Below are positions 1 to 51,374 of a DNA stretch of 64,000 nt, in pieces. The position numbers were made by a program, and so were the translations under genes. Each line of letters begins with the position of its first letter. Position 1 is the first letter of the stretch. The stretch spans positions 162,481 to 226,480 of IMG/VR virus record IMGVR_UViG_3300046323_000587; one strand, given 5' to 3'. Below the pieces are notes generated by a model. It was given only the letters and a program-made list of their open reading frames with translations. It was not told where the DNA came from and ran no database searches.

Positions 1-1251
1 TGTTCCGTAAAAAGTTCTTACAGATTCGTTATCTAAATTTCCAAAACTTCCAGCTGGTTGATCTGGTCTCTCAATATTATTAGTAAAAGGGGTTTTAGTA
101 CTTACTAATAAAGGAGAAATATGTTTAGAATTTTTTACATATTTATCAGGTATATATTTATGAGCATTGACACCTTCGTAAATTGATAATGGGTCAAATC
201 TTTTAAGAGATTCTTCATATTGTTCTTTTAATTCATTATTTTTTCTATTTAAATGTAAATCTCTTATTATAGAACTTGCTTCTGGAGTATAAGTGTAAGC
301 ATATTTTTTATCTGGAGTAGCCCAAAATAGTTCTAAATTTTTACTATATTCTGGTTTTACACGTACTTCTCCTTTTTCGGCTCTTTCTGAATTTGATTTA
401 CTTCCACCTCTATAATAAATATCTTGTACTTTACTACCCTTTAATTCTTTTTGTGCTTGTTCTGATTTAGTAGAAAGATAAAGTGCATCTGCTATATCAT
501 CATCTTTTGTATTTAAATCTTTATAATACTCTCTAGCACCAGGAATTTCATCTTTTATTTGTCCATACAATTTACTACCTCTATCAACTTCAATACCTTG
601 TTCTTTTGCTTGTTTAAGAAAATCAGTAAACATTTCAGTATTACTTACATAATCTTTAATAACAGGTTTAAATGTCTTTGCAGCATCTCCAGCTAATCCA
701 AATAATGGTAATACTCCTGCTAATGTCAATGGTGAAATTTTACCTGTTGATTTATATTCTTTCCAAGCATCAGAAGCACCTTTAACATCTCCAATTACTG
801 GTAACATATCTGCAACAGTATTAACAATAGATTTACTTACAGCTTTGTTATCCATTGTTTTATCAAGTTTATCTTTTGTATTAGGAACATTCACATTACC
901 TAATGTAGCAGTAGTATTCTTTTGTCTAGGTAAAAGATTAGCTTCTTGTGATTGTCTTTGAGACATACCAAATCCACTAGCATTACCGCCACGTTCTTTT
1001 TCTATACGTCTCTGAATAGCTAATCTCGTACTCATATCATCACCTTGTTCTTCTGATAGTTTTTCAATCTCTTGTTGTTGTTCTCTTTTATCAGATAATA
1101 AACCTTTATTGATTTTAAATTCAAAATAGCTGATTGCTCTACTATTTTTATGCTTAATAGCATTAGCATACATATTTCTTTCAACTGGTGAAAGATGCTT
1201 ATTAGCACCAACTTGTAATGCTTGTTTATCTCCGTCTTGATATTTATTCAT
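1..1251 (-). CDS. Polymorphic-effector-like protein, runs off the window edge: conserved N-terminal helical domain + pre-toxin-TG-like segment + ADP-ribosyltransferase-like (ART-PolyVal type) domain
   Basis: Not in ORF track; my translation from ATG 1251 is open to base 1: MNKYQDGDKQALQVGANKHLSPVERNMY...VADMLPVIGDVKGASDAWKEY...SKVQDIYYRGG...LFWATPDKKYAYTY...ISPLLVSTKTP. Confidence 0.65.
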   Translation of the reverse strand, partial: MNKYQDGDKQALQVGANKHLSPVERNMYANAIKHKNSRAISYFEFKINKGLLSDKREQQQEIEKLSEEQGDDMSTRLAIQRRIEKERGGNASGFGMSQRQSQEANLLPRQKNTTATLGNVNVPNTKDKLDKTMDNKAVSKSIVNTVADMLPVIGDVKGASDAWKEYKSTGKISPLTLAGVLPLFGLAGDAAKTFKPVIKDYVSNTEMFTDFLKQAKEQGIEVDRGSKLYGQIKDEIPGAREYYKDLNTKDDDIADALYLSTKSEQAQKELKGSKVQDIYYRGGSKSNSERAEKGEVRVKPEYSKNLELFWATPDKKYAYTYTPEASSIIRDLHLNRKNNELKEQYEESLKRFDPLSIYEGVNAHKYIPDKYVKNSKHISPLLVSTKTPFTNNIERPDQPAGSFGNLDNESVRTFYGT

Positions 1252-1256
1252 TGTCG

Positions 1257-3404
1257 TTATTTATTTAATAATTTTATATTCTTTAAGAACTTCTGTTTAT
1301 CAATATTAATCTTATCTTTCTTTAAATCTTTTAATACATAATCAGAGATTTCTTTTCTATTAGACTTATTTTTCACTTTATTAAGAATTGTAGTAATTCC
1401 TGAAATCATTTCTTTAATGTCTGATGTATTCTTTCCTCCTTTACTATACTTTAAAGGTTTTTTAAGTAACAACTCTTTTGGTTTCTTTACTACTTTGCCT
1501 ACATAATCTATCAAATCAGGTTCAATAATAGAGTGAGCTTCGTGTTCAACTGTACCAGGAATTTTATATCTTAGATTGTTCCCAATTTTATCGTACAATA
1601 TTTGTTTTGGTAGAAAAGAAAAATCATTAGTATTTTGAATACCAGTAAAGTATTTTGTTAATTCTGGAATATTATCCATTATCCAATCAGCTGAATTTTG
1701 ATTTGCATTATGATAATTATCAATAATTTCTTTTGTATGGCTTGTTTGAGGTTCTCTATTTAATTCATTTCCAATATGAGTTGTTTTACTTACTTTTTGT
1801 AAAGCGTGAGGAATTTCACTAATTAAATCTTGATAAGAATTTGGATTAACTGTAATCTTGTGTTCTATAGGGGTATAAAAAGCTCTTGTATTATTTTTAT
1901 TTAATTCAATTTCTGGATTTCCTGATTCTTCTAACAGTTGTTTAATCCTAACTTTATGAGAAGGAAGTAAATTTGAGTTAGACAGCAATTTATTTAAATT
2001 ATCTTTTGTCATTTGTTTTATAGAACTTAACTCTATCTTACTTCCTTTTTGAAATTTCATTAAAAATTTAAGTTTGTTTCCTTTTTTATATATTTGATTT
2101 TGTTGTTCTGGTGAACTAGACTTATTTAAATAAGAATTTATTCCAACTGCTGGTAAAGCTACTGCTGGTAATTTATTCATTGCAGAAACAAATTTTTTCT
2201 TGTCTTTAAGGTAACTTAATAAATCTTTTTTATCTTGTGAGAAGTTATTAAAGTTATTGTCTATATCTTGTTCTGTAAGTAATTTATAAGGATCTTTAGG
2301 ATTTATTTGATGTCTAATTTCTTGCATTCTTGCGGATATCTCTGTAGGTTTTAAAAGATATTCAGCATTTCTATAGTTTTTATCTTTATCTAAAATTTCA
2401 TTAAATTCATATAAAGGTTTATCTGAATGTAATTTTTTATAATTATCTCGAATATTGTCTAAATCAGTATTTCCATTTTCTGAAAATCCGTCAAGCAATA
2501 ATTTTTCTTGTTTTGGGTATATTAAATTATTACTTTGAGTTCTATTATGATCTAATTCATGTATTCCAGTATTTTTTATATCTGGCATACTAGGATCTAA
2601 AAAAACATTTGTTTCTGCTTTAACTATTTTATCTGTTGTTTTATTTAAATTAGGTATAGCAGAATATATTTCTTTATTTTCTATTGGAGTATCTCCTAAT
2701 AAAGGATAGTGTACGCCCATATTACCTTGTAATATATCTTGATCCTTAGTAAGTTGTGGTGTAATTGCATTAGTTCTTTTTCTCATTTTAGCTATATCTT
2801 CATTTATATACCCTACTGCTAAGGCCCTTCTTTCAAATTCTGGACTATTAATTTGTTTTCTGTATGCTTCTGTACCAGCATTTAATTCTTTTTGTGCAGA
2901 AGATTTAGTTAAATTATTTTTTAACTCTAAAGCAGCTTCTTTTACTTCTTTACCAAATTGATTTAATTTCTTTTTAGTTACTGTAACAACTGGTTTTACT
3001 ACATTTTTAGCTAAATTGGTTATTTTTTGTACACCTTTTTGAGCTAATTTTTTAACTACTGCTTTACCTAATAAACTTGTACCTCCAGTTAAAGCAGTTT
3101 CAGCTATTTGTTCAAAAGTATCATCTGGATTAATTTTACCTGTTGCCATACCAGTTTTAGCATCAATTAAGCCTTTATTAATTTTATCTTGTCTAGAGCC
3201 TTCTACAACTCTATTTGAAGCTTCTTTAGCTTTTTGTATCAATTCCCTATTAAGAAATACTCCTACATCATTTTTACCTTTACTAGGATTGTTTTGAGAT
3301 TCCCATAAAGAACGTGGTTTGTTGTTTCCTGTACGTTTAATATATTGTTCATAAGTCTCTACTGTTTTAGCAGGAAACTGAAATTTCTTGTATGATTTAA
3401 TCAT
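1257..3404 (-). CDS. Multi-module candidate virion cargo protein with two zincin-like metallopeptidase modules
   Basis: GIHELDH...YLLKPTEISARMQEIR; second degenerate module ISEIPH...VEHEAH; GGK-type tags at the N-terminus, between modules and near the C-terminus. Confidence 0.6.
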   Translation of the reverse strand: MIKSYKKFQFPAKTVETYEQYIKRTGNNKPRSLWESQNNPSKGKNDVGVFLNRELIQKAKEASNRVVEGSRQDKINKGLIDAKTGMATGKINPDDTFEQIAETALTGGTSLLGKAVVKKLAQKGVQKITNLAKNVVKPVVTVTKKKLNQFGKEVKEAALELKNNLTKSSAQKELNAGTEAYRKQINSPEFERRALAVGYINEDIAKMRKRTNAITPQLTKDQDILQGNMGVHYPLLGDTPIENKEIYSAIPNLNKTTDKIVKAETNVFLDPSMPDIKNTGIHELDHNRTQSNNLIYPKQEKLLLDGFSENGNTDLDNIRDNYKKLHSDKPLYEFNEILDKDKNYRNAEYLLKPTEISARMQEIRHQINPKDPYKLLTEQDIDNNFNNFSQDKKDLLSYLKDKKKFVSAMNKLPAVALPAVGINSYLNKSSSPEQQNQIYKKGNKLKFLMKFQKGSKIELSSIKQMTKDNLNKLLSNSNLLPSHKVRIKQLLEESGNPEIELNKNNTRAFYTPIEHKITVNPNSYQDLISEIPHALQKVSKTTHIGNELNREPQTSHTKEIIDNYHNANQNSADWIMDNIPELTKYFTGIQNTNDFSFLPKQILYDKIGNNLRYKIPGTVEHEAHSIIEPDLIDYVGKVVKKPKELLLKKPLKYSKGGKNTSDIKEMISGITTILNKVKNKSNRKEISDYVLKDLKKDKINIDKQKFLKNIKLLNK

Positions 3405-4188
3405 TGTTGTCTAATTTAAATTTATATAAAGAAAATAATTTTCCTCCTTTTGAGTAAGCAGGTATTACAAATGCAGCTCCAGAAAACCCTTTTGCATAAG
3501 TATTGTAATCTTTCCACTGAGCTGTAGACAATTGATTTTTACTATTTGCTTTTGGTTTTGCTGAATATCTTCCCATATCTTGATAAGTAAAATGCAGATC
3601 TTTTGGATTTAATTCATAATCTTTAATAATTTGTTCTCCTTGTTCTTTTAAAACTTCTGGAATTCCAGATACATCTATACCTATTTGTTTACCATTTTTA
3701 TCAGTAAAGAGATAAGTTACGCTTCCTCCACTAAATCTAGAAAAATTTTGATTTCCTGTACTAGATATACTTGTTTCTTGACCTTTTTTTGTTGGAATAT
3801 AATTAGATTTTTGTCCAATTTGCCAACCTGTAGACTTTCCTTTATTATTCCAGTCTATGTTTGCAAAAGAGTTAGATCTAACTGGTAATTTACTATCGTA
3901 ACCTTCTTCGTCTAAATATTTTTTGTTATTTAAATCAATTCCTTTTATATCTTTAAATTTTTTATACCTAACTAAATATTCTCCATTGAGTTGTTTTTTA
4001 TGTTGAGCTATATAAGTATCGGGAGTTTGTGGAATATCTGGTAAAAATATATCTTCGTACTTAGATTTTACTGGACCACTTTTCCAATCACTATGTTGTT
4101 TTGTATTTTTTTGATTTGGTGTAATGTCTCCGTCCATAATAAAATGAGATACACCTAATACATTATTTAATGTACTATCTTTAGACAT
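3397..4188 (-). CDS. Hypothetical cargo-cassette protein (probably the 3' part of a disrupted longer gene starting at 4862)
   Basis: 263-aa ORF ending in YSKGGKLFSLYKFK tag; the upstream sequence reads as protein in shifted frames. Confidence 0.5.
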   Translation of the reverse strand: MSKDSTLNNVLGVSHFIMDGDITPNQKNTKQHSDWKSGPVKSKYEDIFLPDIPQTPDTYIAQHKKQLNGEYLVRYKKFKDIKGIDLNNKKYLDEEGYDSKLPVRSNSFANIDWNNKGKSTGWQIGQKSNYIPTKKGQETSISSTGNQNFSRFSGGSVTYLFTDKNGKQIGIDVSGIPEVLKEQGEQIIKDYELNPKDLHFTYQDMGRYSAKPKANSKNQLSTAQWKDYNTYAKGFSGAAFVIPAYSKGGKLFSLYKFKLDNND

Positions 4189-4862
4189 TTCGTTTTAATT
4201 TAGGTAATACAATTGTTCTTCCTCCTGTAGAGTTATCAAAAGTTCTTTTAAAAGAGTGTAATTCTCCATTTTTATCTTTAGCAACTCTTAACAATTCATA
4301 AGATTCTCTATATTTCTCTTCAGGTGTTTTTGAATTTGATTTTGAGTTTAGTTTTGAATCTGATTTTGAATTGTTGTTAGAAGTAGATTTTTTAGGCTCT
4401 ACTTTAATTAATTTTGATCCTCATCTTTTGTAGTCAATTTATCTCACCCTCGTTTCAATCCTCCTACAACAACAGTAGCGTTATCAGGAGTAAATATCGA
4501 AGTAACTCTATTTACAAATGAAGGTTCTTGATCAGTTTTGCTTGAATTTTTATTCTCGTTTTGAGAGATAAAACTATTTTCTGTAGAACTTTGTTTAAAA
4601 TTGTTTTGAGTGTTTGGTAGTCTATTAAGAGTAATAGGAGTAGTTTTTTGTCTATTTAAAATAGATTTATTTAATTCTAATCTATTTTTATTTGTGTTTT
4701 CTAAATTATTTTGTTTTAGATAATCTTGGTAAGCTTTTTCTGTTTTTGGTCCCCAAGCTCCATTTATTTTTACACCTAAAACAGACTGTATTTTTTTATT
4801 TTTTCAACACCATTTTCATTTATTTTGCCATTATTTTGAAACTTTTCTATAAATTTTTTCAT
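4189..4862 (-). pseudogene. Disrupted 5' part of a cargo gene with a peptidoglycan-binding-like motif
   Basis: ATG 4862 MKKFIEKFQNNGKI; frameshift in A-runs near 4790-4805 into KIQSVLGVKINGAWGPKTEKAYQDY; in-frame TGA at 4444-4446; further shifts near 4415 and 4190. Confidence 0.55.
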
Positions 4863-5185
4863 TGATTTGTTTTAATTAAATTTTAACAAAGTAATACTGA
4901 TATGAGTTTTACATCATTTTTTTTACAATATTATAAATTATTTTATTTACTCTTCCTAATAGCTAGTAGCTTTATTTTGAACCTTAGTCAAATCCTTTTA
5001 TCTTTTCAGTTTCATTTCTATTAGTTTTGTAGTTAAGTTTTAGGTTTTAATTAAGATTTAAAAGTAAAGTTTAAAATTAAATTAGAGTTCAATATTTAAA
5101 AAGTAAAAGATAAAATAAATAGAGTTCTAAATGATAATATATGAGATTTTAATTACTTTATTGAATTAATAGAGTAACCTTATTC

Positions 5186-6115
5186 TTAATATTTATAATA
5201 AGTTTTAATACTAATAAAAGAAGGAAGATTAATATAAAGACATTGATTACGACCAATGAAACCAGATAAACCAGCTTCTGACATATAATTAAATATGGAA
5301 GAGTCATAAACTTGATGTTTAGTATTAATATAGTTCCTTTTTTCATCAAATAATAAACCAAGTTTTTTTAACTTATTGAAGATATTTTTAGCTTGTTGAT
5401 AAGTAACAGATTTAAGTTTTGCTAAAACACTTCTACTTGAAAAAGCAACAGGATTAATTAAATCTTTAAAATTGAATTTAGATAAATTAGAGAAGAAGCG
5501 CGAACCATATTTTGTAATATAATTATCAAAATTCTCGTTTATATGTTTAGTAAGACGAGAAATGATATTTTTATTAGCTTGATTTAATTTTTGCTCACTA
5601 GCTATGAAAATGCCTTTTTCTTTTAATTCATTCTTAACAATTTTATCAATAATAACTTTTTCTTGTTGTTTTTTATTTTGGTCAAGTGCATCTGCAATTA
5701 GAATTTCTTCTAGCATATACAAATCACCACAAGGTACTTTTAATACTCTAGTTTTAGCTACAACGATTTCTGAGTTTTCTGACCAAAATTCGTGAGTACG
5801 AAACACTTTTTTAGTAGCTTGAATAGTAAGATTATTTCCATCTAAAGTAACCCAACCAAGAGCAAGAAGATTTTTAATATGTTTTTTGACCCATTGCTCA
5901 GATGGTGTACGTAAATCACAATCATTTACTACAAATTGATTTATATTTCTAATATCAAGATATTGTGATTTATAGTTTAATATAACACCTCCAACATATA
6001 AAGCTTTCAATTTAAAAAAGAAACAAGTATTACTCATCATAGTATTGTCTAATACCAGATATCTTGATAAACCAACAGGAATAGAAATTTGAGTAACTTG
6101 TTTAATTTGTTTCAT
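5186..6115 (-). CDS. Hypothetical DNA-binding/replication-initiator-like protein with winged-HTH-like segments, inserted in the cargo cassette
   Basis: KKHIKNLLALGWV and SRSVLAKLKSVTYQQAKNIFNKLKKLGLL helices; lacks the cassette tag; flanked by AT-rich spacer. Confidence 0.4.
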   Translation of the reverse strand: MKQIKQVTQISIPVGLSRYLVLDNTMMSNTCFFFKLKALYVGGVILNYKSQYLDIRNINQFVVNDCDLRTPSEQWVKKHIKNLLALGWVTLDGNNLTIQATKKVFRTHEFWSENSEIVVAKTRVLKVPCGDLYMLEEILIADALDQNKKQQEKVIIDKIVKNELKEKGIFIASEQKLNQANKNIISRLTKHINENFDNYITKYGSRFFSNLSKFNFKDLINPVAFSSRSVLAKLKSVTYQQAKNIFNKLKKLGLLFDEKRNYINTKHQVYDSSIFNYMSEAGLSGFIGRNQCLYINLPSFISIKTYYKY

Positions 6116-6173
6116 TTTTATTATTTGTTTAAATGTTAAGAGAGTGTTATGATGTAAATATAACTAAAATAAT

Positions 6174-7172
6174 TTATCTTCTTTTGTCGAAACCAAATTT
6201 TTTTTGTTCTAGTAACAAATATATATAAGGATTTTCGTCTTGTGTATACTGTTTTTGTAAGGAACTTAATTTATTTAAAATTTCTTCTTTAGAATTTTTA
6301 TCTATATTTCTTAACTTATCAAAATCTTTGCTTAAAATTTCTTGTAAATTAGTTTTAAATACAGCTGGAGATCTTTTTTCTAATTCTGGCAATAAATTGA
6401 GGTTATTGATATAATCATCTTTAAGTTTTATTACATTTTTTAAATTATTTTTATCAGATAAAATTTTTAAAAAATTGTCGCTATCTGTAGCAGATTTTGA
6501 CATTTCAGATAAACCTATATCTGAAATATTTTTTATTGGATTAAATTTAGAGCTGATTTGCGAAACTAGTTTATTTTTTAACTGTTTCCCTAAAATAGGT
6601 ATAGTTTTTGCCCCAACAGTTATTAGTGATCCTACATCTGTCACTGGTTCAACTAAATTACTTACACCAGATATAGTATTCTCTAATGTATGTTGTTTAT
6701 TAGCTTCATTTCTTTTTTTATTGTATTGGGTTTGTTGATAAAGCTTTAAATCAGGGTCTTTAGTTTTATTTATCTTACGTTGAGCAACATAGTCTTCCTC
6801 AGTCTTTTCTGGACGGCCTGACACAGCTTCTTTAATATCTGATACAGCTAAACTAATAGAATTTCCTGATAAAGTATTATATAAAGGAATATAAGCTTTC
6901 CAAGAATTTGCATTAGATTGTTTTTCTACTAAATTTGTACCGTCTCTTTGATCTCTTCCAGATAATTCAGAAAGACGTTCAATTTCAGATTGTTGTTCTT
7001 TATTATCTTTAACTAATCCTTTATTAATCTTATTTTCAAAGTAATTTATTAATTTACTATTCTTTTTAGCAACTGCTCCTCTATACATTGCTTGTTCAGT
7101 AGCTGATAAATGTTTTTGAGCACCTTTATTCAAACCACCTAATTGATGTTTTAATATTGATTTTAATTTCAT
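6174..7172 (-). CDS. Paralog of the 1-1251 protein (shared N-terminal domain), different C-terminus
   Basis: GAQKHLSATEQAMYRGAVAKKNSKLINYFENKINKGLVKDNKEQQSEIERLSE aligns with GANKHLSPVERNMYANAIKHKNSRAISYFEFKINKGLLSDKEEQQQEIEKLSE. Confidence 0.7.
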   Translation of the reverse strand: MKLKSILKHQLGGLNKGAQKHLSATEQAMYRGAVAKKNSKLINYFENKINKGLVKDNKEQQSEIERLSELSGRDQRDGTNLVEKQSNANSWKAYIPLYNTLSGNSISLAVSDIKEAVSGRPEKTEEDYVAQRKINKTKDPDLKLYQQTQYNKKRNEANKQHTLENTISGVSNLVEPVTDVGSLITVGAKTIPILGKQLKNKLVSQISSKFNPIKNISDIGLSEMSKSATDSDNFLKILSDKNNLKNVIKLKDDYINNLNLLPELEKRSPAVFKTNLQEILSKDFDKLRNIDKNSKEEILNKLSSLQKQYTQDENPYIYLLLEQKKFGFDKRR

Positions 7173-7176
7173 TGTT

Positions 7177-7494
7177 TTATAATATAAATTTTAATAAAGA
7201 ATTTAACTTACCTCCTTGTTTCCAAGTTTTAAATCTTTTATGCCAATATAAAGGACTAAATGGGTCTTTTGCTTTTGAAGAATCTTTACCTCCCATTCTA
7301 TTCCAGAAGTTATTACGTCTATCTTTATTTTTATGTTGAGTAAAATCTTCCATTCCACGAAATCCTCCTGAAACTATTTTATATTTATCACCTTTCTTTG
7401 CTAATACCTGCCACTTTTTACTTGAATCAGCTGGAGCTGTTTTCTTAACTCCTACTTTATTAAATCCTTTCTTTATATATCTTTCTGGTATCAT
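7177..7494 (-). CDS. Small basic DUF5754/DUF6321-like viral protein
   Basis: KKWQV...KIVSGG.RGMEDFTQHK..DRR..F..R......DPFSPLYW pattern; C-terminal WKQGGKLNSLLKF tag. Confidence 0.55.
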   Translation of the reverse strand: MIPERYIKKGFNKVGVKKTAPADSSKKWQVLAKKGDKYKIVSGGFRGMEDFTQHKNKDRRNNFWNRMGGKDSSKAKDPFSPLYWHKRFKTWKQGGKLNSLLKFIL

Positions 7495-7508
7495 TTTCTA
7501 TTGATAAT

Positions 7509-8303
7509 TTAATTTATTTTAAATTTACTTAAAGAAGAAAGTTTAGCTCCTTTCTTAGCATATAATACACTAGATTTTTGTTTGTTGCTTACTAAACCAT
7601 TCATCATCTCAATAAATTTATTATCCTCAAAAGATTTAATTAAATTTCCCAGTTTCAATCCTTTATGTTTTGATTTAATCAATTCTAAATCTTCTAATTT
7701 AAACTTATCTTCTGGTTTTTTGTTAAGAAACTTTCTCATTCCCATTAACTCAGGATATAATTCGTGTTCTTGTCCATTATTAAATTGATCTACTTCTCCA
7801 GACTTAGTATAACTTTTAATATAATTCTGTAATTCAGAACTTTCATCAAAATGTGTAGAATGAGTAAATTCGTGAACACTTGTACGAGGAATAGATACAA
7901 TACCATCACCTAAAAAATCATTATATTTCTTAATAGTTTTAGGGAAGACTACAACTTGATGTTTATCTTTTAGGTAAGCTCCTGATACACCTTTATAATG
8001 ACGTTTAACTTTTTCAATATCTTCTTTTGTATATGGTGTATCATTAACAGGAGATTTTAAAAACATTTCTCGTTCTATTTCATCTTCAGGTATAACTGAA
8101 ACTGTATTTAATTTGTTTTGAATATTAGATAAAGTTGTATTAGCTTTTTTCTTGTTACCATACAACTTTATCATTTTATCTCTTGTTGTAGGATTATTAA
8201 ACCAATCTTTTACATAATTAAGATGTTCTTTTAAATCTGTTTCAGAATTTACAGAAGTATTTTGGACAGATTTTGTAGGTTTATCTTTGTCAAATTTGTT
8301 CAT
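7509..8303 (-). CDS. Zincin-like metallopeptidase, candidate cargo
   Basis: VHEFTHSTH then QEHELYPELMGMR; C-terminal YAKKGAKLSSLSKFK tag. Confidence 0.6.
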   Translation of the reverse strand: MNKFDKDKPTKSVQNTSVNSETDLKEHLNYVKDWFNNPTTRDKMIKLYGNKKKANTTLSNIQNKLNTVSVIPEDEIEREMFLKSPVNDTPYTKEDIEKVKRHYKGVSGAYLKDKHQVVVFPKTIKKYNDFLGDGIVSIPRTSVHEFTHSTHFDESSELQNYIKSYTKSGEVDQFNNGQEHELYPELMGMRKFLNKKPEDKFKLEDLELIKSKHKGLKLGNLIKSFEDNKFIEMMNGLVSNKQKSSVLYAKKGAKLSSLSKFKIN

Positions 8304-8348
8304 AGCATAAATTTGTTTTATATTGATTTTATTTGATTTATACGATTT

Positions 8349-8606
8349 TTATAAAACATTTGATCCAGAGTTTAACTTATTAATATCTTTACTTAAATCA
8401 GCTAATATCGATTTAATTTCAAGTTTATCTTTTTCTGTAAATGGATTGATTTTTTGAATTTTGTCAAAATTAGGTGTAATCTCAGTTGGGTTGTTTAATT
8501 TGATTCCTGAAATTGATTTTTGGTAAGCTTTTTTTGTAATATTGTCCCAAATACCTGTTTGAGAAATGTTGAGATATTTTTGTAATAATTTTATACGCTC
8601 TTTCAT
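8349..8606 (-). CDS. Small protein with peptidoglycan-binding-1-like N-terminus
   Basis: IKLLQKYLNISQTGIWDNITKKAYQ. Confidence 0.5.
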   Translation of the reverse strand: MKERIKLLQKYLNISQTGIWDNITKKAYQKSISGIKLNNPTEITPNFDKIQKINPFTEKDKLEIKSILADLSKDINKLNSGSNVL

Positions 8607-8626
8607 AATTATTAAATTATTATTAA

Positions 8627-9286
8627 TTAAGCACTAACTTGTGTATTAGGTCTTGGATGTAATCTCCAATACATTTGAGTGTATTTATTCACCATTCTTC
8701 CTATAATATCAGAAACCATCCAATTAGGTATTCCAGAAGGTGTCTCTCCATCTATTTTACAACAACCAAATTCTTCTAAATCTTTTGGATTAGCAGGAAT
8801 AAAATCTACACTAATATATTTAATGTTTTCAGTTGGAGGGTTAAATAAAAACCCATCTTTAAGATTTGGGTGAAACCAGACAAAAGGTTTTGTACGAGTA
8901 AATTTACCATAATCTTGTTGTTTCCAAGTTGGGCCTTTAACTATATTGAATACATATTCTCTATCAACAGTTCCTACAAACTTAATTGGATTTAGAACAT
9001 ATTGAGAAGGTTTAGGTAATTTAAAATGTAGTGTATTATTGAAGGAAGATACATTGCAACATAAACTTAAATCTTGACAATCTAATTCTAAACAATTAAT
9101 AGATTGTATTAATTCATTTTCTTGTAAAGTACCAGATAAAGATAATTGTTTAATTATTGCATCTCTTTCTACTAATATCTCATCTTGTAATTGTTCGTGA
9201 GAATAAGGTTCTTGTAAAGTTGCTCCTTTTAACCCAGCTAAAATATGATTATTAATTGCAGAAGCTATTTGTTCTAGAGTATTCAT
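8627..9286 (-). CDS. crAss-like tail ring/adaptor protein
   Basis: LEQIASAINNHILAGLKG...EQLQDEI...C..LDC and PRPNTQ end resemble crAss-like ring proteins; position in capsid block. Confidence 0.55.
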   Translation of the reverse strand: MNTLEQIASAINNHILAGLKGATLQEPYSHEQLQDEILVERDAIIKQLSLSGTLQENELIQSINCLELDCQDLSLCCNVSSFNNTLHFKLPKPSQYVLNPIKFVGTVDREYVFNIVKGPTWKQQDYGKFTRTKPFVWFHPNLKDGFLFNPPTENIKYISVDFIPANPKDLEEFGCCKIDGETPSGIPNWMVSDIIGRMVNKYTQMYWRLHPRPNTQVSA

Positions 9287-9289
9287 TGA

Positions 9290-10740
9290 TTAAAATTTAA
9301 TTTTATTAAATGAAGATAGTATACCTCCTAATTTAAAAGTCTTATTCATAATTTTTTTAATATTTCTTTTGTTTGTCATTTCGTCAGGTTTAATTTCTCT
9401 ATTAAACAAAGTATTTGCTATTTTAGCAAAGAATTTAGGTTGTTTTTTTGTACTATGATATAATTCATAAGTATCTGTATCTATATCTTCAGAGTTATTT
9501 TCTGCTAAATTTTTCAACTCTTTCCAATTTTTGTTTTTAAATTTTTTTTGTGAATTGTATTTACCTAAATCCTCTAAATTAAACATTGTAGTATATTTTC
9601 TAGCCAACCTTTCATCAGGAATAGATAAATAATCTTTATAAGGTTTTGTTGGTTCTCCATTTAACTGTTCACTTATTTTTTGTTCGATAGCTAAATTTTT
9701 ATGTAAATTTTTAATATAAGCATTTTCATCAGATTCTTTTTTTCCATAGGTAGATTCTAATATATATATATATTTTTATCTGAAAGATTGTTTCCTCCTC
9801 CTGTAGCTGCGTGTGAAAATTCGTGAGTACCTAAATATTTATATATATCTTTATAAGTTCTTTCTACATCTTTAGATTTATTGTAGGGACCTACTTCCAT
9901 AGGAAAAACAAATTCTTTTTTTGAAGGTAAGTTAATTTTTTTTGTATTATTAGAAAAAATTTGTACGTTAGGAGATGTTAAATTGTCTTTTGGGTAATCT
10001 AGCCCTGTATCTTCTAAATTTTTTAATCTTGTACCTATTTGTTTATCATTATATCCAGCAACTTTATTTAATTTTTGACCTCTTTTCGAAGTATAAAAAT
10101 CTATCAATCTTTTTTTATCGGGTTCGTAAGAATCTTTAAAAGATTTTTTATCGGTATAATTTTTTAAATTATAGCCCTCTAATTTTGTAGGTAAAGGTTG
10201 TTGAGATTTACCAGTTAATCTAATAATTTCAGAATCTACATTTTCTTTATGCCAACCAACAAGTTTTTGTTTATATTCTTCAGCATTATTTTTTGCCTCT
10301 TTTAAATTTTGAGTTATTTTTTCTATTTGTTGTTTATCTATAGGATCTAAAGAGTAGTTTTTTGGATCTTCCAATTTTTTAAAAGATTCTTTCCTATTAT
10401 AAAAATCTAAATCTTTTTCTAAGTCTTTTACATGATTTGTATACAATGTATTAACATCTGTTGGAGTTTTTTGTTCGGCTTTTAAATTTTCTAATTCATT
10501 AAGCAAATTTTCTCTATTCATTTTATTCCAAGGGTCTACATTTTCTTGAAATTCTTCTTCAGGTGTATCATAAGTAGGAATATCTGGAGCGTAATAATTA
10601 TTATATTTATCTTTTGAGTCTTTTTTAATATTTCTTTTTCCTTTAATATCTACATTTTTTAGTACAATAGTTGAATTTTGTAAAGTTCCATCAGGTTCTT
10701 GGTATTTTTTAATTTTTTTAAAACTATTTAGTTTTTTCAT
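9290..10740 (-). pseudogene. Zincin-like metallopeptidase cargo gene split by a 2-nt frameshift in a (TA)n tract (ORFs 9757..10740 and 9290..9607)
   Basis: THEFSH upstream; removing one TA at 9760-9773 gives DKNIYILESTYG...YLSIPDERLARKY in frame with the downstream ORF ending FKLGGILSSFNKIKF. Confidence 0.75.
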
Positions 10741-10758
10741 ATCGAATTTAATTTTAAA

Positions 10759-10794
10759 TAAAAAGCCTCAACCCAATGATTGAGTTAAGGCTTT
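10759..10794 (-). terminator. Intrinsic terminator after the capsid gene block
   Basis: AAAGCCTCAACCCAA/TTGAGTTAAGGCTTT hairpin with A-run (U-run on minus strand). Confidence 0.65.
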
Positions 10795-10840
10795 GAATTG
10801 ATTTGTTTTAATTGTTTGTAATAAAGAACTTTAACTAAAA

Positions 10841-11863
10841 TTAAACTTTAAATGCAGCAGCAGCAATAAGAGCAGGAGCAAGTGGAGTTTTATCAAAGAA
10901 TCTCGGAGCAACAAATTTAGTAGCATCAACTGTGGAAAGAACTGTCGCACGATTCAAGAAATCAACTACTGGATTTTGATAAGTTACCAAGCAAGAATCA
11001 TTAACAAAAATTTCAAAGTTACCACTTGTTTCAGCAATACCGTTAACAACACCATTACCACCATTTTGATTGATTCCATTATCATAACTTGACCAAGCTA
11101 AACTTGAATACAAATCGCCTTTAATAGGAGTAGTAAAACGATCAATTGAGTATGGCATACGATCTGCTGTATCAATAAACATTGATTTCAAGTTATAATA
11201 CTCATTTCTACCTGCAAAACCAATTACTTGAGAAGGAACTGTTTGAGTATAAGTAATATATGGAGATACTACATTGTCATCACCAAGAAATTCAATTTTA
11301 ACTAATTTAGCTTGATCAATTGCAGTCAAATCTAAAGCAGTCATTGTAATTGTTTTATTAGCTACAACTGTTGCAGAATAAGGAGCAGCAAGAATAGCTG
11401 TTAAAGAAGGTACAGTTATTAAGTTATTTCCATAAGAAAAAGATTGGAAAATCATTGCATTGTAAAGTTTTGCAAGAACAGTATTAGCTGTATCAGCAGT
11501 ATTTACAACCAATTGAACTACCAATTCTCTAGCTGGATCTCCCATTCTAGTAAAATCAGATTCATTTGAAAAAGAATGAAGAGTAGCTTTCATTTTAACA
11601 ATAGTTCCATTTGGAGTAGACGCACTATAAAAAAAGTTACCTCCAGCAATCAACCGATCTACTTGTTTAGTTCCAGCAACACCTCTATTACCAACTACTT
11701 TGTGTAATTTGTTAATATCAAATCTACCAAAACCTTCAACATCCATATAAGTTCCTAAAAGAGCTGTGGAAGGAGCATAATTTGTATCCCAAAATTTTAA
11801 GGGGAATAATGTAGCATTGTTAATTAATACTTGTTTTGTACCTGTACTAATAAATTGTGACAT
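10841..11863 (-). CDS. Probable auxiliary capsid/structural protein
   Basis: 340-aa beta-rich Ala/Thr protein, P.KG.LY motif, last gene of capsid block before terminator. Confidence 0.5.
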   Translation of the reverse strand: MSQFISTGTKQVLINNATLFPLKFWDTNYAPSTALLGTYMDVEGFGRFDINKLHKVVGNRGVAGTKQVDRLIAGGNFFYSASTPNGTIVKMKATLHSFSNESDFTRMGDPARELVVQLVVNTADTANTVLAKLYNAMIFQSFSYGNNLITVPSLTAILAAPYSATVVANKTITMTALDLTAIDQAKLVKIEFLGDDNVVSPYITYTQTVPSQVIGFAGRNEYYNLKSMFIDTADRMPYSIDRFTTPIKGDLYSSLAWSSYDNGINQNGGNGVVNGIAETSGNFEIFVNDSCLVTYQNPVVDFLNRATVLSTVDATKFVAPRFFDKTPLAPALIAAAAFKV

Positions 11864-11910
11864 AATTTTATTATTATTATTTGTAAATAAATAAATCTAT
11901 TGATATTAGC

Positions 11911-12771
11911 TTAACCAACTTGTGGAGGAGCAATACTCATAGATACATTAGGTTGAGATCCTTGTCTAGGATCACTTGCATTCTCAAAAATTAGTATCAT
12001 CATTTCATTAAGAATTTCTTGACAAATATAATTTGGAAATTCTAGTGTTGCAGAAGTGTCTGTTGATGAACCTGCTAAAGTTTGATCGTTATATTCTGTG
12101 TATGTAAGTTGAATTACTTTTGGAACTCTGATATAACTAATCTCTATTTTTTCAATAGAAAATTTAGGGTGGTTTCCTGTTAATATTTCTATTTCAGCAT
12201 TATTTGCACCCGAAATAAGGTTAGTTCTTACAGTAGTTAAATAAACAGATTGTGCAATATCAGGATTATCAGAAATCAAATATAATACATTAGTATAGCT
12301 GGGTCTTTGATAAAAATCTGTTAATACATACTGATATTGTGAATCTGTAATTCTTCTTGTTTTAATAGCAGGAAATATATCTCCCGGCTGGTAACAATTT
12401 TTTTGTTGTATTGCTTTAAAATATACATTAACTCTTGTAATATGATAATAATCAAGAGGAAGGAGGAATTTAATACCTTGATTAACTGGTGTAATAGTTA
12501 CAGCATTAGATTGGTAATGATCTAAAATATTACCTGTTACCATAGAAGCTATTGCACTTGTAGAAGATTGAATATTTATTGAGATAGTGGTTTTTAATCT
12601 AGATAAATCATCAGTTGCTTGTTGATTTATTTCAAAACCATTATATTTTTTATTAATGTATTGATTTAAAGCTTTGTTTGCAAAATAATTCCATTCTTCA
12701 AGATTAAGAGAAGGAGCATTGACCTTCTTTTGTTCAATTAAAGAATATTCAAATAACTCCTTTGTTGTCAT
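11911..12771 (-). CDS. crAss-like ring (head-tail adaptor) protein
   Basis: APSLNLEEWNYFANKA...FEINQQATDDL...ISYIRVP...LEFPNYICQEI...ENASDPR. Confidence 0.7.
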   Translation of the reverse strand: MTTKELFEYSLIEQKKVNAPSLNLEEWNYFANKALNQYINKKYNGFEINQQATDDLSRLKTTISINIQSSTSAIASMVTGNILDHYQSNAVTITPVNQGIKFLLPLDYYHITRVNVYFKAIQQKNCYQPGDIFPAIKTRRITDSQYQYVLTDFYQRPSYTNVLYLISDNPDIAQSVYLTTVRTNLISGANNAEIEILTGNHPKFSIEKIEISYIRVPKVIQLTYTEYNDQTLAGSSTDTSATLEFPNYICQEILNEMMILIFENASDPRQGSQPNVSMSIAPPQVG

Positions 12772-13917: not shown

Positions 13918-15306
13918 TTAGATATTTTCTTGCATAATAAAACCAGCATAAGGGTTGAATACAGCTACACCAGAGTAACCAATGATAGATTTAGTTGTAC
14001 CGTCAAAAGTAGAACCCATTGTACCAGAAGTCATACCATCAACTCCACCTAAACCTGGCAAAGTACCTTCAATCATTTCACGTCCTTTAAGAGTAAACAT
14101 AGAAACATTTGCACGTCCTTCTACCATTGTAGTATCAATAAACAAAGCATAACCATATTTATCATAAATTTCAGAAAGAATTGTATCAACAGTAAAGTTG
14201 ATAGTATTTCCCATCCATTGATAAGCTTTAAATGAACCACCAACTGTAATGTCTCCACCATTTTTAGTCCAGTAATAACCTCCATCAATAGCAGTAGACC
14301 TTAATTTATCTTCAAGAGCTTTAGAAATTTGTTTATATCCAATCCAGTTACAAACTACTGTGATATTATTTCCTGTTGTTTTACCTGTTTTTTTAACAAT
14401 ACTATCAATAGCATCTTCAAAAATAGAAGTAGTTAATTTTGTGTAGAAAAATTTATCGCAATAACGTTCAATTTGAGCTAATACCCCGTCACCTGAATCT
14501 AAAGCAGCTCCTGTAATACTATCGTGATCTAAGCAATTGCCGTTAATATCATGGTTATCTCTGCCTAACAACATTGAATTTTCTCTCATATAAAGGAATT
14601 GATCCAAGATTGCTTTTGCAGGTTGCTCCATTTTAAAATATTGTTTATTATCAGCTTGTCCAGCTTCAAAATAAATCATTTTAGCATCATTAGTCCAGCT
14701 ACCATCAACACGTACACGAGTAATATATCCACGGTGTTCTTCTAATTTCAACATACCTTTTTGATTACGTTGATCAACAGAACCATCAGATACGATATTT
14801 GAACGGAACATAGTTCTACGACCTCTTGTGGTGTATTGAGTATTCAGTCCTCTTGACATATCATTGTTTACTAAAACACAAGTATATCTCCAACGATTGT
14901 TATTCATTTTTTCTGGCGCTTGGATAACACGCAATTGAGTTACATTGTCTTCCAAAGAGAAAGTATCATTTGTTGCATAATAATTTTTCTCTAAAATCAA
15001 TGCAATAGGTTGTCTATTAGATCCACTTGAAGTACAATCTTCCATAATCGTTACTTTAGGAATCATATTAGTTTCAATTCTCCAAGTAAATTGCATTGCA
15101 TTAACAGATTCATAACTAGATTTACGATCTCTTACAATAACTCTACCTAAACCTTGTGTAATTGTAGAAATTGTCAAATCTTTTCTTGTTCTAGCCATTA
15201 AACCTAGTGCAGTTGTTCTTTTACCTAAAAGAGAGCTAATATTTTGTATGTTTTGTGTTGTATTCTGCAAATTTTGTGGTAAATCACTTAATTCAATTAC
15301 TCTCAT
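13918..15306 (-). CDS. Major capsid protein (crAss-like, HK97 fold)
   Basis: 462 aa; FTWRIE, N..WRYTC.L, EEHRGYIT..RVD.SW, GDGVLAQIE, GVAVFNPY motifs; follows acidic scaffold gene. Confidence 0.85.
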   Translation of the reverse strand: MRVIELSDLPQNLQNTTQNIQNISSLLGKRTTALGLMARTRKDLTISTITQGLGRVIVRDRKSSYESVNAMQFTWRIETNMIPKVTIMEDCTSSGSNRQPIALILEKNYYATNDTFSLEDNVTQLRVIQAPEKMNNNRWRYTCVLVNNDMSRGLNTQYTTRGRRTMFRSNIVSDGSVDQRNQKGMLKLEEHRGYITRVRVDGSWTNDAKMIYFEAGQADNKQYFKMEQPAKAILDQFLYMRENSMLLGRDNHDINGNCLDHDSITGAALDSGDGVLAQIERYCDKFFYTKLTTSIFEDAIDSIVKKTGKTTGNNITVVCNWIGYKQISKALEDKLRSTAIDGGYYWTKNGGDITVGGSFKAYQWMGNTINFTVDTILSEIYDKYGYALFIDTTMVEGRANVSMFTLKGREMIEGTLPGLGGVDGMTSGTMGSTFDGTTKSIIGYSGVAVFNPYAGFIMQENI

Positions 15307-51227: not shown

Positions 51228-51281
51228 TAGCCTTTATTTTTTTATTTAGTGACACCACTTTAAATTAATTCTTAAAGCAAT

Positions 51282-51349
51282 GCTCTTATAGTTTAATGGA
51301 AAAATCTCTGATTATTCAGATGTTCTTGGTTCGATTCCAGGTGAGAGCA
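51282..51349 (+). tRNA. tRNA-like gene with truncated anticodon loop (pseudo-tRNA)
   Basis: Acceptor GCTCTTA/TGAGAGC, D-arm TAGTTTAATGG, T-arm CTTGG-TTCGATT-CCAGG; anticodon stem TCTGA/TCAGA closes only TTAT. Confidence 0.7.
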
Positions 51350-51374
51350 ATAAACTTTTTAATACCCCAAAACT

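What the first reader, a model, noticed from the sequence alone, without database searches (positions are those of the whole stretch)
9290..10740. Metallopeptidase cargo gene switched off by a (TA)n microsatellite: possible phase variation
Seen: the HEFSH-containing ORF stops at ...DKNIYIY* immediately after the ATATATATATATAT tract (9760-9773). Losing one TA unit (or gaining two) reads through 50 open codons. These supply YLSIPDERLAR, the third-ligand motif matching YLLKPTEISAR of the 715-aa paralog, and continue to the C-terminal GG tag. The OFF state therefore removes both the predicted third zinc ligand and the C-terminal tag. Inference: a slipped-strand ON/OFF switch; an assembly error is the alternative.
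Basis: partly seen in the sequence, partly recalled or inferred. Interest (0 to 1): 0.6.

Follow-up and report, generated by a model that had tools for sequence, protein, structure and literature searches.

The report
Phage accessory gene frameshifted at (TA)7
A lineage-specific, probably zinc-peptidase-like gene of a 226-kb freshwater crAss-like phage really is split by a two-base frameshift at a (TA)7 repeat, but every assembly available carries the same broken allele, so it looks more like a recently lost dispensable gene than a proven on/off switch.

Summary
On the minus strand a 327-aa ORF (9757-10740) with HEFSH ends in TAG just after (TA)7 (9760-9773). The -1/+2 frame then stays open for 160 codons (to 9290) and carries YLSIPDERLAR and a C-terminal tail shared with three neighbouring ORFs. 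One TA unit fewer fuses the two parts.

It is not an assembly error. A second IMG/VR contig and contigs from two further freshwater samples carry exactly (TA)7.

No other tract length was seen. No homologue exists in 1.84 billion protein representatives.

The gene is an insertion between a terminator and the R2 ring-protein gene. It is absent in a 272-kb relative and in a ~94% relative. A ~89% copy may carry a nonsense codon.

Best reading: a recent slipped-strand frameshift in a dispensable accessory gene, reversible in principle, with switching unproven.

"Metallopeptidase" rests on motifs and language-model or fold leads only. "Cargo" is inferred from gene position.

Programmed recoding has no support: no slippery heptamer and no downstream RNA structure. 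One odd fact remains: the phage's only tRNA has a 6-nt anticodon loop centred on UA. Interest is modest.

The parts
9757..10740 (-). Upstream part of the broken gene: 327-aa ORF (P0001), ending in TAG at 9757-9759
   Evidence: Coding signature +0.63 per codon. No homologue found.
9811..9825 (-). HEFSH (HExxH) motif, residues 306-310 of P0001
9760..9773 (.). (TA)7 tract, the longest TA run in the 226-kb genome. It fills the 6-codon overlap of the two frames.
   Evidence: Same length in L001 and in contigs of X3 and X4.
9290..9775 (-). Downstream part in the -1/+2 frame: 160 open codons (P0002) plus the TAA stop at 9290-9292. First canonical start is the TTG at 9605-9607.
   Evidence: P(open by chance) <= 1.7e-7 and coding signature +0.55 per codon.
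9599..9631 (-). YLSIPDERLAR, the candidate second zincin helix with the Glu ligand. It lies 67 residues after HEFSH in the fused reading.
   Evidence: The 715-aa protein has YLLKPTEISAR 71 residues after HELDH.
9293..9334 (-). C-terminal tail KLGGILSSFNKIKF, shared with three other ORFs of the block
10762..10794 (-). Intrinsic terminator of the conserved 340-aa structural gene. The inserted gene starts 21 nt after it.
   Evidence: The same terminator-then-R2 layout, without the gene, is seen in L006 and L009.
8627..9286 (-). Crassvirus tail ring protein 2 (R2) gene. Its ATG lies 3 nt after the stop of the broken gene.
   Evidence: Pfam PF25702, E 2.9e-11. Homologues.
10841..11863 (-). Conserved 340-aa structural-module gene upstream. 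It sits directly next to R2 in relatives.
   Evidence: 40% identical to L006 5895-6917. Synteny.
7509..8303 (-). 264-aa neighbour with HEFTH and the same C-terminal tail (...KKGAKLSSLSKFKIN). It is the closest in-genome look-alike.
   Evidence: Alignment to the X-joined gene spans the break, z 3.1. Atlas leads to LPD23 and zincin folds.
1257..3404 (-). 715-aa protein (P0003) with HELDH, YLLKPTEISAR and an internal copy of the tail motif
3397..4188 (-). 263-aa ORF ending ...SKGGKLFSLYKFKLDNND (tail motif). It has a weak, sub-threshold crAss_CARG1 hit.
   Evidence: (E 0.069)
7177..7497 (-). Short ORF ending ...KQGGKLNSLLKFIL (tail motif)

Best explanation
A real DNA-level frameshift. Slipped-strand mispairing at the (TA)n run most simply took (TA)6 to (TA)7. 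This broke a roughly 483-aa accessory gene that this phage lineage carries between the terminator of a conserved structural gene and the R2 ring-protein gene.

The broken allele is the consensus in every sample that holds the phage. It makes a 327-aa product that keeps the HEFSH helix but lacks the Glu-bearing second helix (PDERLAR) and the shared C-terminal tail, so it is presumably inactive.

The downstream 160 codons are still intact and still look coding, so the event is recent. A 7-unit dinucleotide run is slippage-prone, so occasional revertants are expected. Nothing shows that the phage uses this as a switch.

Shown: the frame break, the tract, the identical allele in several assemblies, the insertion and its dispensability. 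Inferred: the direction of the slip, the loss of activity, the zincin function and any role as a virion cargo protein.
For: - Anatomy.
- The tract is the longest TA run in the genome and coincides exactly with the frame overlap.
- The downstream frame is open (P <= 1.7e-7) and has a coding signature.
- The C-terminal tail is shared by four ORFs at peptide level. The HExxH to PxExxAR spacing is 67 against 71 residues in P0003.
- The alignment to the 264-aa neighbour crosses the break (z 3.1).
- The (TA)7 allele is identical in a second IMG/VR contig and in contigs of samples X3 (9552-9877, 0 differences) and X4 (9694-9844, 0 differences).
- Dispensability: the 272-kb relative L006 and L009 have the 340-aa gene, terminator and R2 with no gene between.
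- An X4 contig joins 9287 to 10760 with 19 nt between.
- A ~89% copy in X2 shows TGG>TAG at codon 163 and mostly non-synonymous changes.
- No homologue anywhere.
Against: - Only contigs, not raw reads, were available. A minority (TA)6 or (TA)9 population cannot be excluded.
- The four samples seem to hold one near-clonal strain. They exclude an artefact but are not evolutionarily independent.
- An intact 160-codon downstream frame also fits a maintained switch or a recoding mechanism.
- The deletion joint in X4 has depth 2.
- The nonsense reading in X2 rests on 6 of 16 listed differences in one 151-nt contig.
Confidence: 0.58

Rival explanations
1. A true contingency locus. The (TA)n tract is kept by selection as a reversible ON/OFF switch. 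OFF phages avoid a cost of the protein, for example recognition by a host defence. ON phages arise by slippage when the protein is needed.
For: - The tract is unusually long for this genome, which is otherwise depleted of TA runs, and it lies inside the ORF.
- Both halves are still intact and look coding.
- OFF removes a catalytic motif and the tail cleanly.
Against: - No second allele was found in any collection or run.
- There is only one such tract-in-ORF in 226 kb, so this is not a genomic strategy.
- Relatives have lost the gene entirely or may carry a nonsense codon. That is what decay looks like, not balancing selection.
Confidence: 0.2
2. Programmed or compensatory recoding. On a (UA)7 mRNA the full-length protein would be made at some rate in one of three ways: a +2 hop of peptidyl-tRNA-Ile from AUA to the overlapping AUA, doublet (-1) decoding of UA, or 2-nt slippage of the RNA polymerase. 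The phage would then make both a 327-aa and a roughly 483-aa product. The phage's own tRNA, with a 6-nt anticodon loop centred on UA, could be the shifter.
For: - The OFF allele is fixed while the downstream frame stays intact.
- A +2 hop on AUAUA re-pairs perfectly and gives the same protein as the (TA)6 allele. This follows directly from the sequence.
- The only tRNA of the genome has the loop AUUAUU and is called tRNA-?(Stop|Ile)(ta).
- -1 shifting by doublet decoding exists for E. coli tRNA-Ser3 (PMC12202706).
- 'Savior indel plus low-level compensatory frameshifting' is known for the G-run of herpesvirus thymidine kinase (PMC5009743).
Against: - There is no X XXY YYZ heptamer.
- No RNA structure lies downstream (z -0.19).
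- The word 'dinucleotide' does not occur in the held part of the comprehensive recoding review, so no precedent was found.
- The tRNA is more simply an AUA-reading tRNA-Ile for an AT-rich phage, where AUA makes 31 per 1000 codons, or a defective gene.
- No relatives were available to test conservation.
Confidence: 0.08
3. Two genes by design. A 327-aa protein and a separate small protein of about 98-105 aa carrying the tail, started at the TTG (9605-9607) or the ATG seven codons further downstream. The 55 open codons between would be a leftover.
For: the ORF listing finds a 105-aa ORF with a TTG start. The small ORF 7177-7497 shows that short tail-bearing proteins exist in the block.
Against: - The stretch before the TTG is open, scores as coding and holds the conserved YLSIPDERLAR motif at the spacing seen in P0003.
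- The HExxH helix without its partner helix makes no sense as a designed end.
- The alignment to the 264-aa neighbour crosses the break.
Confidence: 0.07
4. An assembly or sequencing error: the real phage has an in-frame tract.
For: Dinucleotide runs can be miscalled, and the consensus came from a metagenome assembly.
Against: - The same 14-nt tract, without indel, appears in a second IMG/VR contig.
- It also appears in short-read-derived contigs of two other samples from other studies: X3 (326 nt, depth 6.2) and X4 (151 nt, depth 3).
- The genome shows no other frameshift-like junctions on the gene-dense strand.
Confidence: 0.03

Closest known systems
Simple-sequence-repeat contingency loci, such as in-ORF CT or polyG tracts of bacterial surface genes and polyG tracts in receptor-binding genes of Campylobacter phages
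   Same: A short tandem repeat inside an ORF whose unit number sets the reading frame. One unit more or fewer turns the full-length protein off or on by slipped-strand mispairing.
   Different: - Only one allele (OFF) has been seen here.
- The repeat is (TA)n inside a coding region. As far as I know TA repeats are described in promoters, for example H. influenzae hif, rather than in ORFs.
- The genome has a single such tract.
- The gene is missing or possibly broken in relatives.

The named examples are from my own knowledge. PMC4235727 appeared in the literature search as a general review but was not read.
Zincin-like metallopeptidase domains of polyvalent proteins of phages and conjugative elements (Iyer et al. 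2017, PMC5512222), including Pfam LPD23
   Same: - An HExxH helix followed by a second helix with a Glu, which is the core described in PMC5512222.
- The gene is phage-encoded and lies in a virion-protein gene module.
- The two intact look-alikes in the block (264 aa; P0003 residues 180-420) both land nearest to LPD23 clusters by language-model features. By the Atlas's own models they land near M13, Zn_peptidase, Peptidase_Mx, ATLF and MA_2 folds.
   Different: - No profile match: Pfam at E <= 10 and a six-frame search with PF18838 both found nothing.
- Feature scores are 0.86-0.89 and TM about 0.4-0.6, which makes them leads only.
- These are small stand-alone proteins, not multidomain polyvalent proteins.
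- The broken gene itself could not be searched in the Atlas.
Crassvirus cargo proteins C1/C2 (gp45, gp46 of PhiCrAss001; Bayfield et al. 2023, PMC10172136)
   Same: The gene sits in the tail and cargo part of the structural module of a crAss-like phage, next to the ring proteins. In PhiCrAss001 the inner surface of those rings binds a helix of cargo protein C1.
   Different: - No sequence relation to C1 or C2. Only the 263-aa neighbour has a sub-threshold CARG1 hit (E 0.069).
- Presence in the virion is untested.
- The gene is a lineage-specific insertion and not part of the conserved cargo set.
'Savior' or 'problem' indels with low-level compensatory frameshifting, such as the herpesvirus thymidine kinase G-run (PMC5009743)
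   Same: A frameshifting indel in a repeat run leaves the downstream frame intact. A little full-length product could still be made by slippage.
   Different: That case is a homopolymer. No dinucleotide-run case was found, and no expression data exist here.
Phage morons and accessory-gene insertions between conserved late genes
   Same: A single ORFan gene inserted precisely between a terminator and the next conserved gene. It is present in some strains and absent in close relatives.
   Different: It shares a C-terminal tail with a 10-kb block of other lineage-specific genes in the same module. That suggests a family of related virion-associated proteins rather than a random moron.

Membership tests
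SSR contingency locus (phase variation) | A tandem repeat inside the ORF or promoter whose unit number changes the frame or expression | tested here: met
   (TA)7 at 9760-9773 fills the overlap of the two frames. One unit fewer or two more fuses them.
SSR contingency locus (phase variation) | Tract-length polymorphism within or between populations, with ON and OFF alleles both observed | tested here: not met
   Only (TA)7 was seen: the window, IMG/VR contig L001, and contigs of X3 and X4. Flank-pattern scans allowing 6-24 nt between the flanks found nothing else in IMG/VR, JGI metagenomes or GTDB genomes. Contigs hide minority alleles, so this holds at consensus level only.
SSR contingency locus (phase variation) | Repeat over-represented or maintained against decay; the gene kept in relatives | tested here: not met
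   A single long in-ORF TA tract in 226 kb. The gene is absent in L006, L009 and an X4 relative, and a ~89% copy may carry a stop.
Zincin-like metallopeptidase (MPTase of polyvalent proteins / LPD23) | HExxH in a helix | tested here: met
   HEFSH at residues 306-310 of P0001. Helix not verified.
Zincin-like metallopeptidase (MPTase of polyvalent proteins / LPD23) | A second helix with a Glu ligand downstream of HExxH | tested here: inconclusive
   PDERLAR lies 67 residues downstream in the other frame, and PTEISAR lies 71 residues downstream in P0003. This is a motif only, and no usable model was obtained (AF2 pLDDT 40).
Zincin-like metallopeptidase (MPTase of polyvalent proteins / LPD23) | Significant profile match to the family | tested here: not met
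   Pfam and PHROGs gave no hit. The six-frame search of the genome with PF18838 gave no match at E <= 10.
Zincin-like metallopeptidase (MPTase of polyvalent proteins / LPD23) | Zincin fold | tested here: inconclusive
   Atlas leads for the two intact look-alikes only, with TM 0.35-0.59 to peptidase families. The broken gene itself was not folded.
Crassvirus cargo protein | Homology to C1 or C2, or presence in the virion | tested here: not met
   No CARG1 or C2 hit for P0001 or P0002. Presence in the virion cannot be tested with these tools.
Programmed ribosomal frameshift site | Slippery heptamer X XXY YYZ (for -1), or a shift-prone codon before a slow codon, plus a stimulatory RNA structure | tested here: not met
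   The sequence reads U AAA AAU AUA UAU AUA UAU UAG, with no canonical heptamer. The 150 nt downstream fold no better than shuffles (z -0.19).
Programmed ribosomal frameshift site | Frame break conserved in diverged relatives | not testable with these tools
   No relatives of the gene are retrievable.
Crassvirales (context) | Crass-type major capsid protein, ring proteins and muzzle protein in conserved order | tested here: met
   Crass_capsid E 2.2e-22 for 13918-15306. R2 E 2.9e-11. R1 and MUZ homologues in G000 and L006.

The most novel reading that the evidence does not exclude
The frame break is decoded, not dead. The phage's single tRNA has a six-nucleotide anticodon loop, AUUAUU, centred on UA or UAU. 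It would promote a -1 (doublet) or +2 (AUA to AUA hop) shift on the (UA)7 run, so that a phage-encoded shifter tRNA sets the ratio of the truncated to the full-length tailed zincin-like protein. That would be a first natural case of tRNA-programmed frameshifting on a dinucleotide repeat.
Probability: 0.03. Interest if true: 0.9.

Novelty: new member of a known kind. Interest (0 to 1): 0.3.

Why it matters
If the tract does switch, it would be an in-ORF dinucleotide-repeat contingency locus in an environmental crAss-like phage. It would control a putative injected or virion peptidase. That would extend repeat-driven phenotypic heterogeneity beyond the polyG tracts of Campylobacter phages.

As the evidence stands, it is an ordinary example of accessory-gene turnover. 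One strain has a frameshift, one relative may have a nonsense codon, and others lack the gene.

The context may be the more useful lead. A roughly 10-kb lineage-specific block of ORFan proteins sits between the two tail-barrel ring genes. Several of these proteins end in the same short tail. This is a testable candidate for a virion-loading or docking signal in crassviruses.

Tried and rejected
- **Nucleotide and protein searches of phage records (INPHARED):** no match.
- **Word-index protein search:** run with P0001 and the 264-aa neighbour; each found only itself.
- **Exhaustive HMMER search over 1.84 billion representatives with P0001:** only itself.
- **IMG/VR, JGI metagenome and GTDB scans with peptides or flank patterns:** these allowed 6-24 nt between the flanks. 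They found only the window's own record and one identical contig.
- **Pfam, PHROGs and a six-frame LPD23 search:** no family.
- **BLASTP of the X-joined protein against all ORFs of the genome:** no significant paralogue. Smith-Waterman with shuffles gave z 1.2 against P0003 and z 3.1 against the 264-aa protein.
- **AlphaFold2 single-sequence model of the 264-aa neighbour:** pLDDT 40 and unusable, so no fold search was run on it.
- **RNA fold downstream of the tract:** no structure beyond shuffles.
- **Search for the odd tRNA in IMG/VR, allowing any loop length:** no match. The 272-kb relative's record is not held for genome search.
- **GGAGG inside the tail-coding DNA as a Shine-Dalgarno for the next gene:** rejected, because it lies 36-50 nt upstream and the conservation is at peptide level.
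- **TAG read-through by an alternative code:** rejected. TAG ends 14 of 122 long ORFs, and the zero frame closes again after about 22 codons.
- **Not attempted:**
  - No complex prediction of the two halves was sent, because single-sequence folding of this family fails.
The join was made only in scripts, with X at the break.
Full report
**What the window is.** The window is the last 64 kb of a 226,480-bp IMG/VR virus record (G000:C1:162481-226480). CheckV estimates it about 95% complete. GC content is 25%, and the holders are freshwater metagenomes. It is a crAss-like phage:
- a Crass-type major capsid protein at 13918-15306 (Pfam E 2.2e-22);
- tail ring protein R2 at 8627-9286 (PF25702, E 2.9e-11);
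- R1 and muzzle homologues further on in the genome.

Table 11 gives dense, long ORFs, so no alternative code is needed. TAA ends 102 of 122 long ORFs, TAG 14 and TGA 6.

**The observation.** The gene lies on the minus strand.
- The ORF 9757-10740 (327 aa, P0001) carries HEFSH at residues 306-310 (9811-9825). It ends ...DKNIYIY, then TAG.
- Its last codons are the tract ATATATATATATAT (9760-9773).
- The -1 (=+2) frame opens at 9775, right after a TAA, and runs 160 codons to the TAA at 9290-9292 (P0002).
- That frame contains YLSIPDERLAR (9599-9631) and ends KLGGILSSFNKIKF.
- The two frames overlap only in AAA AAU AUA UAU AUA UAU UAG, which is the tract itself.
- Two bases fewer or four more fuse them.

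**Is it more than chance?**
- (TA)7 is the longest TA run in the genome. A first-order Markov model expects about 0.1 runs of 14 nt or more, and shorter runs are depleted.
- It is the only frameshift-like junction on the gene-dense strand.
- Off-frame stop density in this genome is 9-16% per codon, so 160 open codons have P <= 1.7e-7.
- The downstream part scores as coding in its own frame: +0.55 per codon against -0.70 and -1.61 in the other frames. The upstream part scores +0.63.

**One former gene.** Three lines tie the halves together.
- In the fused reading PDERLAR lies 67 residues after HEFSH. In the intact 715-aa protein (P0003, 1257-3404) PTEISAR lies 71 residues after HELDH, within YL..P.E..AR in both.
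- The best local alignment of the X-joined sequence to the 264-aa neighbour (7509-8303; HEFTH) crosses the break. It matches VFP and HEFxH before it and YIK and F.LEDL after it (z 3.1; 3 of 300 shuffles reach the score).
- The downstream frame ends in a tail, K-x-G-[GA]-x-L-x-S-[LF]-x-K-[FI]-K. This tail closes four ORFs (stops at 9290, 7509, 7177 and 3397) and occurs once inside P0003. All lie within about 8.5 kb and nowhere else in the genome. The DNA carries synonymous differences, so the tail is a peptide feature.

Overall pairwise similarity to P0003 is not significant (z 1.2). BLASTP finds no paralogue. "Paralog" therefore means shared motifs, not demonstrable homology over the whole length.

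**Not an artefact.**
- A second IMG/VR contig (141 kb, another sample) is 100% identical over 9-12.6 kb, including the tract.
- Four runs were laid on 7500-12500. Only Logan contigs were on offer, not raw reads.
- Sample X3 has a 326-nt contig on 9552-9877, and sample X4 has a 151-nt contig on 9694-9844. Both have 0 differences and 0 gaps, and both come from other samples and studies than the likely sources X1 and X2.
- The tool masks 9754-9785 as a repeat. It reports that no gap rows were dropped there, and the contig lengths equal the spans covered.

**No switching seen.** No other tract length was found:
- not in those contigs;
- not by flank patterns allowing 6-24 nt between them in IMG/VR, JGI metagenome contigs and GTDB genomes;
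- not by peptide-seeded scans.

Contigs drop rare variants, so a minority ON population is not excluded. The samples appear to hold one near-clonal strain.

**The gene is an insertion and is dispensable.** R2 homologues led to a 272-kb relative, L006. Its gene order is MCP, 316 aa, 286 aa, 340 aa, R2, R1, 482 aa, MUZ.
- In L006 the 340-aa gene is followed by a terminator and then, 84 nt after its stop, by R2. L009-L012 show the same layout.
- In the window the same terminator (10794-10762) is followed by the HEFSH gene. The stop of that gene lies 3 nt before the R2 ATG.
- One X4 contig from a relative joins 9287 to 10760 with 19 other letters between. That relative is about 94% identical on the neighbouring R2 stretch. 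The contig has depth 2 and a shorter side of 49 letters. It lacks exactly this gene.
- A ~89% identical copy in X2 (a contig on 10158-10302) carries C>T at 10253, which reads TGG>TAG at codon 163. It also carries four further listed changes that alter residues and one synonymous change. Only 6 of its 16 differences were listed, so this is tentative.
- The protein has no homologue in 5.8 billion clustered proteins by word search. It has none in 1.84 billion representatives by full HMMER.

**What the protein is.**
- Pfam and PHROGs give nothing.
- Language-model and fold look-ups were possible only for the two intact look-alikes. Both the 264-aa protein and P0003 residues 180-420 land nearest to LPD23 clusters (0.86-0.89).
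- By the Atlas's own models they land near M13, Zn_peptidase, Peptidase_Mx, ATLF/M90, M78 and MA_2 folds at TM 0.35-0.59.
- These are leads. The LPD23 profile itself does not hit the genome.
- The layout fits the zincin-like peptidase core described for polyvalent proteins of phages: an HExxH helix followed by a second helix with a Glu (PMC5512222). The tract lies between the two elements.
- An AlphaFold2 single-sequence model of the 264-aa protein was unusable (pLDDT 40).

"Cargo" is an inference from position. In PhiCrAss001 cargo proteins fill the capsid and the tail barrel, and a helix of C1 binds the inside of R1 and R2 (PMC10172136). Here the gene, and a roughly 10.3-kb block of ORFan genes between R2 and R1, sit in that module. 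Only the 263-aa ORF has a CARG1 hit, and it is sub-threshold (E 0.069).

**Mechanism.** The most likely history is a one-unit gain at a (TA)6 run by slipped-strand mispairing during replication. This gave a truncated, presumably inactive product.
- The event is recent, because the downstream frame is intact.
- The allele is the consensus wherever the strain is seen.
- The same run can slip back, so revertants must arise at some rate. Whether that rate matters biologically is unknown.
- Loss of the gene in relatives, and the possible nonsense allele, favour plain decay (0.58) over a maintained switch (0.20).

**Recoding.** The needed shift is -1/+2.
- There is no canonical slippery heptamer and no downstream structure (z -0.19).
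- The large recoding review never uses the word "dinucleotide" in its held part.
- A +2 hop of tRNA-Ile from the last AUA to the overlapping AUA would re-pair perfectly. It would give the same protein as a (TA)6 allele.
- The phage's only tRNA (51281-51350; Rfam 50.8 bits) has a 6-nt anticodon loop, AUUAUU. ARAGORN cannot decide between Stop and Ile, and reports the anticodon as "ta".
- The simpler reading of that tRNA is an AUA reader for an AT-rich genome, where AUA makes 31 per 1000 codons. It could also be a defective gene.
- I keep recoding as a low-probability case (0.08 in all, about 0.03 for the tRNA link).

**Verdict.**
- The assembly-error alternative is rejected.
- The phase-variation reading is mechanistically possible but unsupported by any observed variation.
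- The peptidase and cargo labels are plausible inferences.
- The finding is a new member of a known kind: a repeat-borne frameshift in an accessory phage gene. Interest is modest.

Noticed in passing
window 51281-51350 (+): The only tRNA gene of the 226-kb phage scores 50.8 bits with Rfam tRNA but has a 6-nt anticodon loop, AUUAUU, on a 4-5 bp stem. ARAGORN labels it tRNA-?(Stop|Ile)(ta). It could be an AUA-reading tRNA-Ile, a defective gene or a frame-shifting tRNA. No copy was found in IMG/VR with any loop length.
   Followed up: partly
window 1-8626, continuing to G000:160810 (outside the window): A roughly 10.3-kb block of ORFan genes lies between the ring-protein genes R2 and R1. These two genes are 27 nt apart in the 272-kb relative L006. 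Four ORFs of the region end in the same tail, K-x-G-[GA]-x-L-x-S-[LF]-x-K-[FI]-K: three in this block, with stops at 7509, 7177 and 3397, plus the broken gene itself (stop at 9290). The 715-aa protein has an internal copy. This is a candidate virion-loading or docking signal.
   Followed up: partly
window 10690-10740, 7125-7172, 3360-3404 (-): The N-termini of three proteins of the region resemble the C-terminal tail motif placed at the other end of the protein: MKKLNSFKKIKKYQEPDG, MKLKSILKHQLGG and MIKSYKKFQFP. The 332-aa ORF and the 712-aa ORF running off the window start also share a clearly paralogous N-terminal stretch of about 50 aa.
   Followed up: no
window 10158-10302 (contig of run X2): A ~89% identical copy of the gene exists in sample X2. 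The listed differences include C>T at 10253 (TGG>TAG, codon 163) and mostly non-synonymous changes. Only 6 of 16 differences were shown.
   Followed up: partly
window 9287-10760 (contig of run X4): A contig of depth 2 joins 9287 to 10760 with 19 other letters between. It comes from a relative that lacks exactly the HEFSH gene; a separate X4 contig on the adjacent R2 stretch (9088-9287) is about 94% identical.
   Followed up: partly
L006:1564-3866: In the 272-kb relative the crass-type major capsid gene is split into two ORFs by a LAGLIDADG homing-endonuclease ORF, probably an intron. The window's MCP (13918-15306) is uninterrupted.
   Followed up: no
L008:5249-6263: An R2 homologue (53% identical) is fused to a YkuD_2 L,D-transpeptidase domain at the end of a 6.3-kb contig of a Flavobacterium sp. 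MAG that otherwise carries bacterial genes. This is a host lead, a prophage remnant or a chimeric contig.
   Followed up: no
G000:97481-102976 and 104617-111645 (-), outside the window: Two giant ORFs (1832 and 2343 aa) also carry HExxH motifs (HEIVH and HEITH). They may be the zincin domains of the virion RNA-polymerase-type cargo proteins.
   Followed up: no
G000:33099-33111, outside the window: The second-longest TA run (13 nt) lies in what looks like an A/T-rich intergenic stretch. It was not examined further.
   Followed up: no
G000:58056-58083 (+), outside the window: A 294-aa ORF is followed, in another frame, by a 200-codon open stretch whose first ATG is at codon 46. No repeat lies at the junction. 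This may be a second split gene or a non-ATG start.
   Followed up: no
whole record G000: At 226 kb and 25% GC this is an unusually large crAss-like genome from fresh water. The nearest relative found is 272 kb.
   Followed up: no
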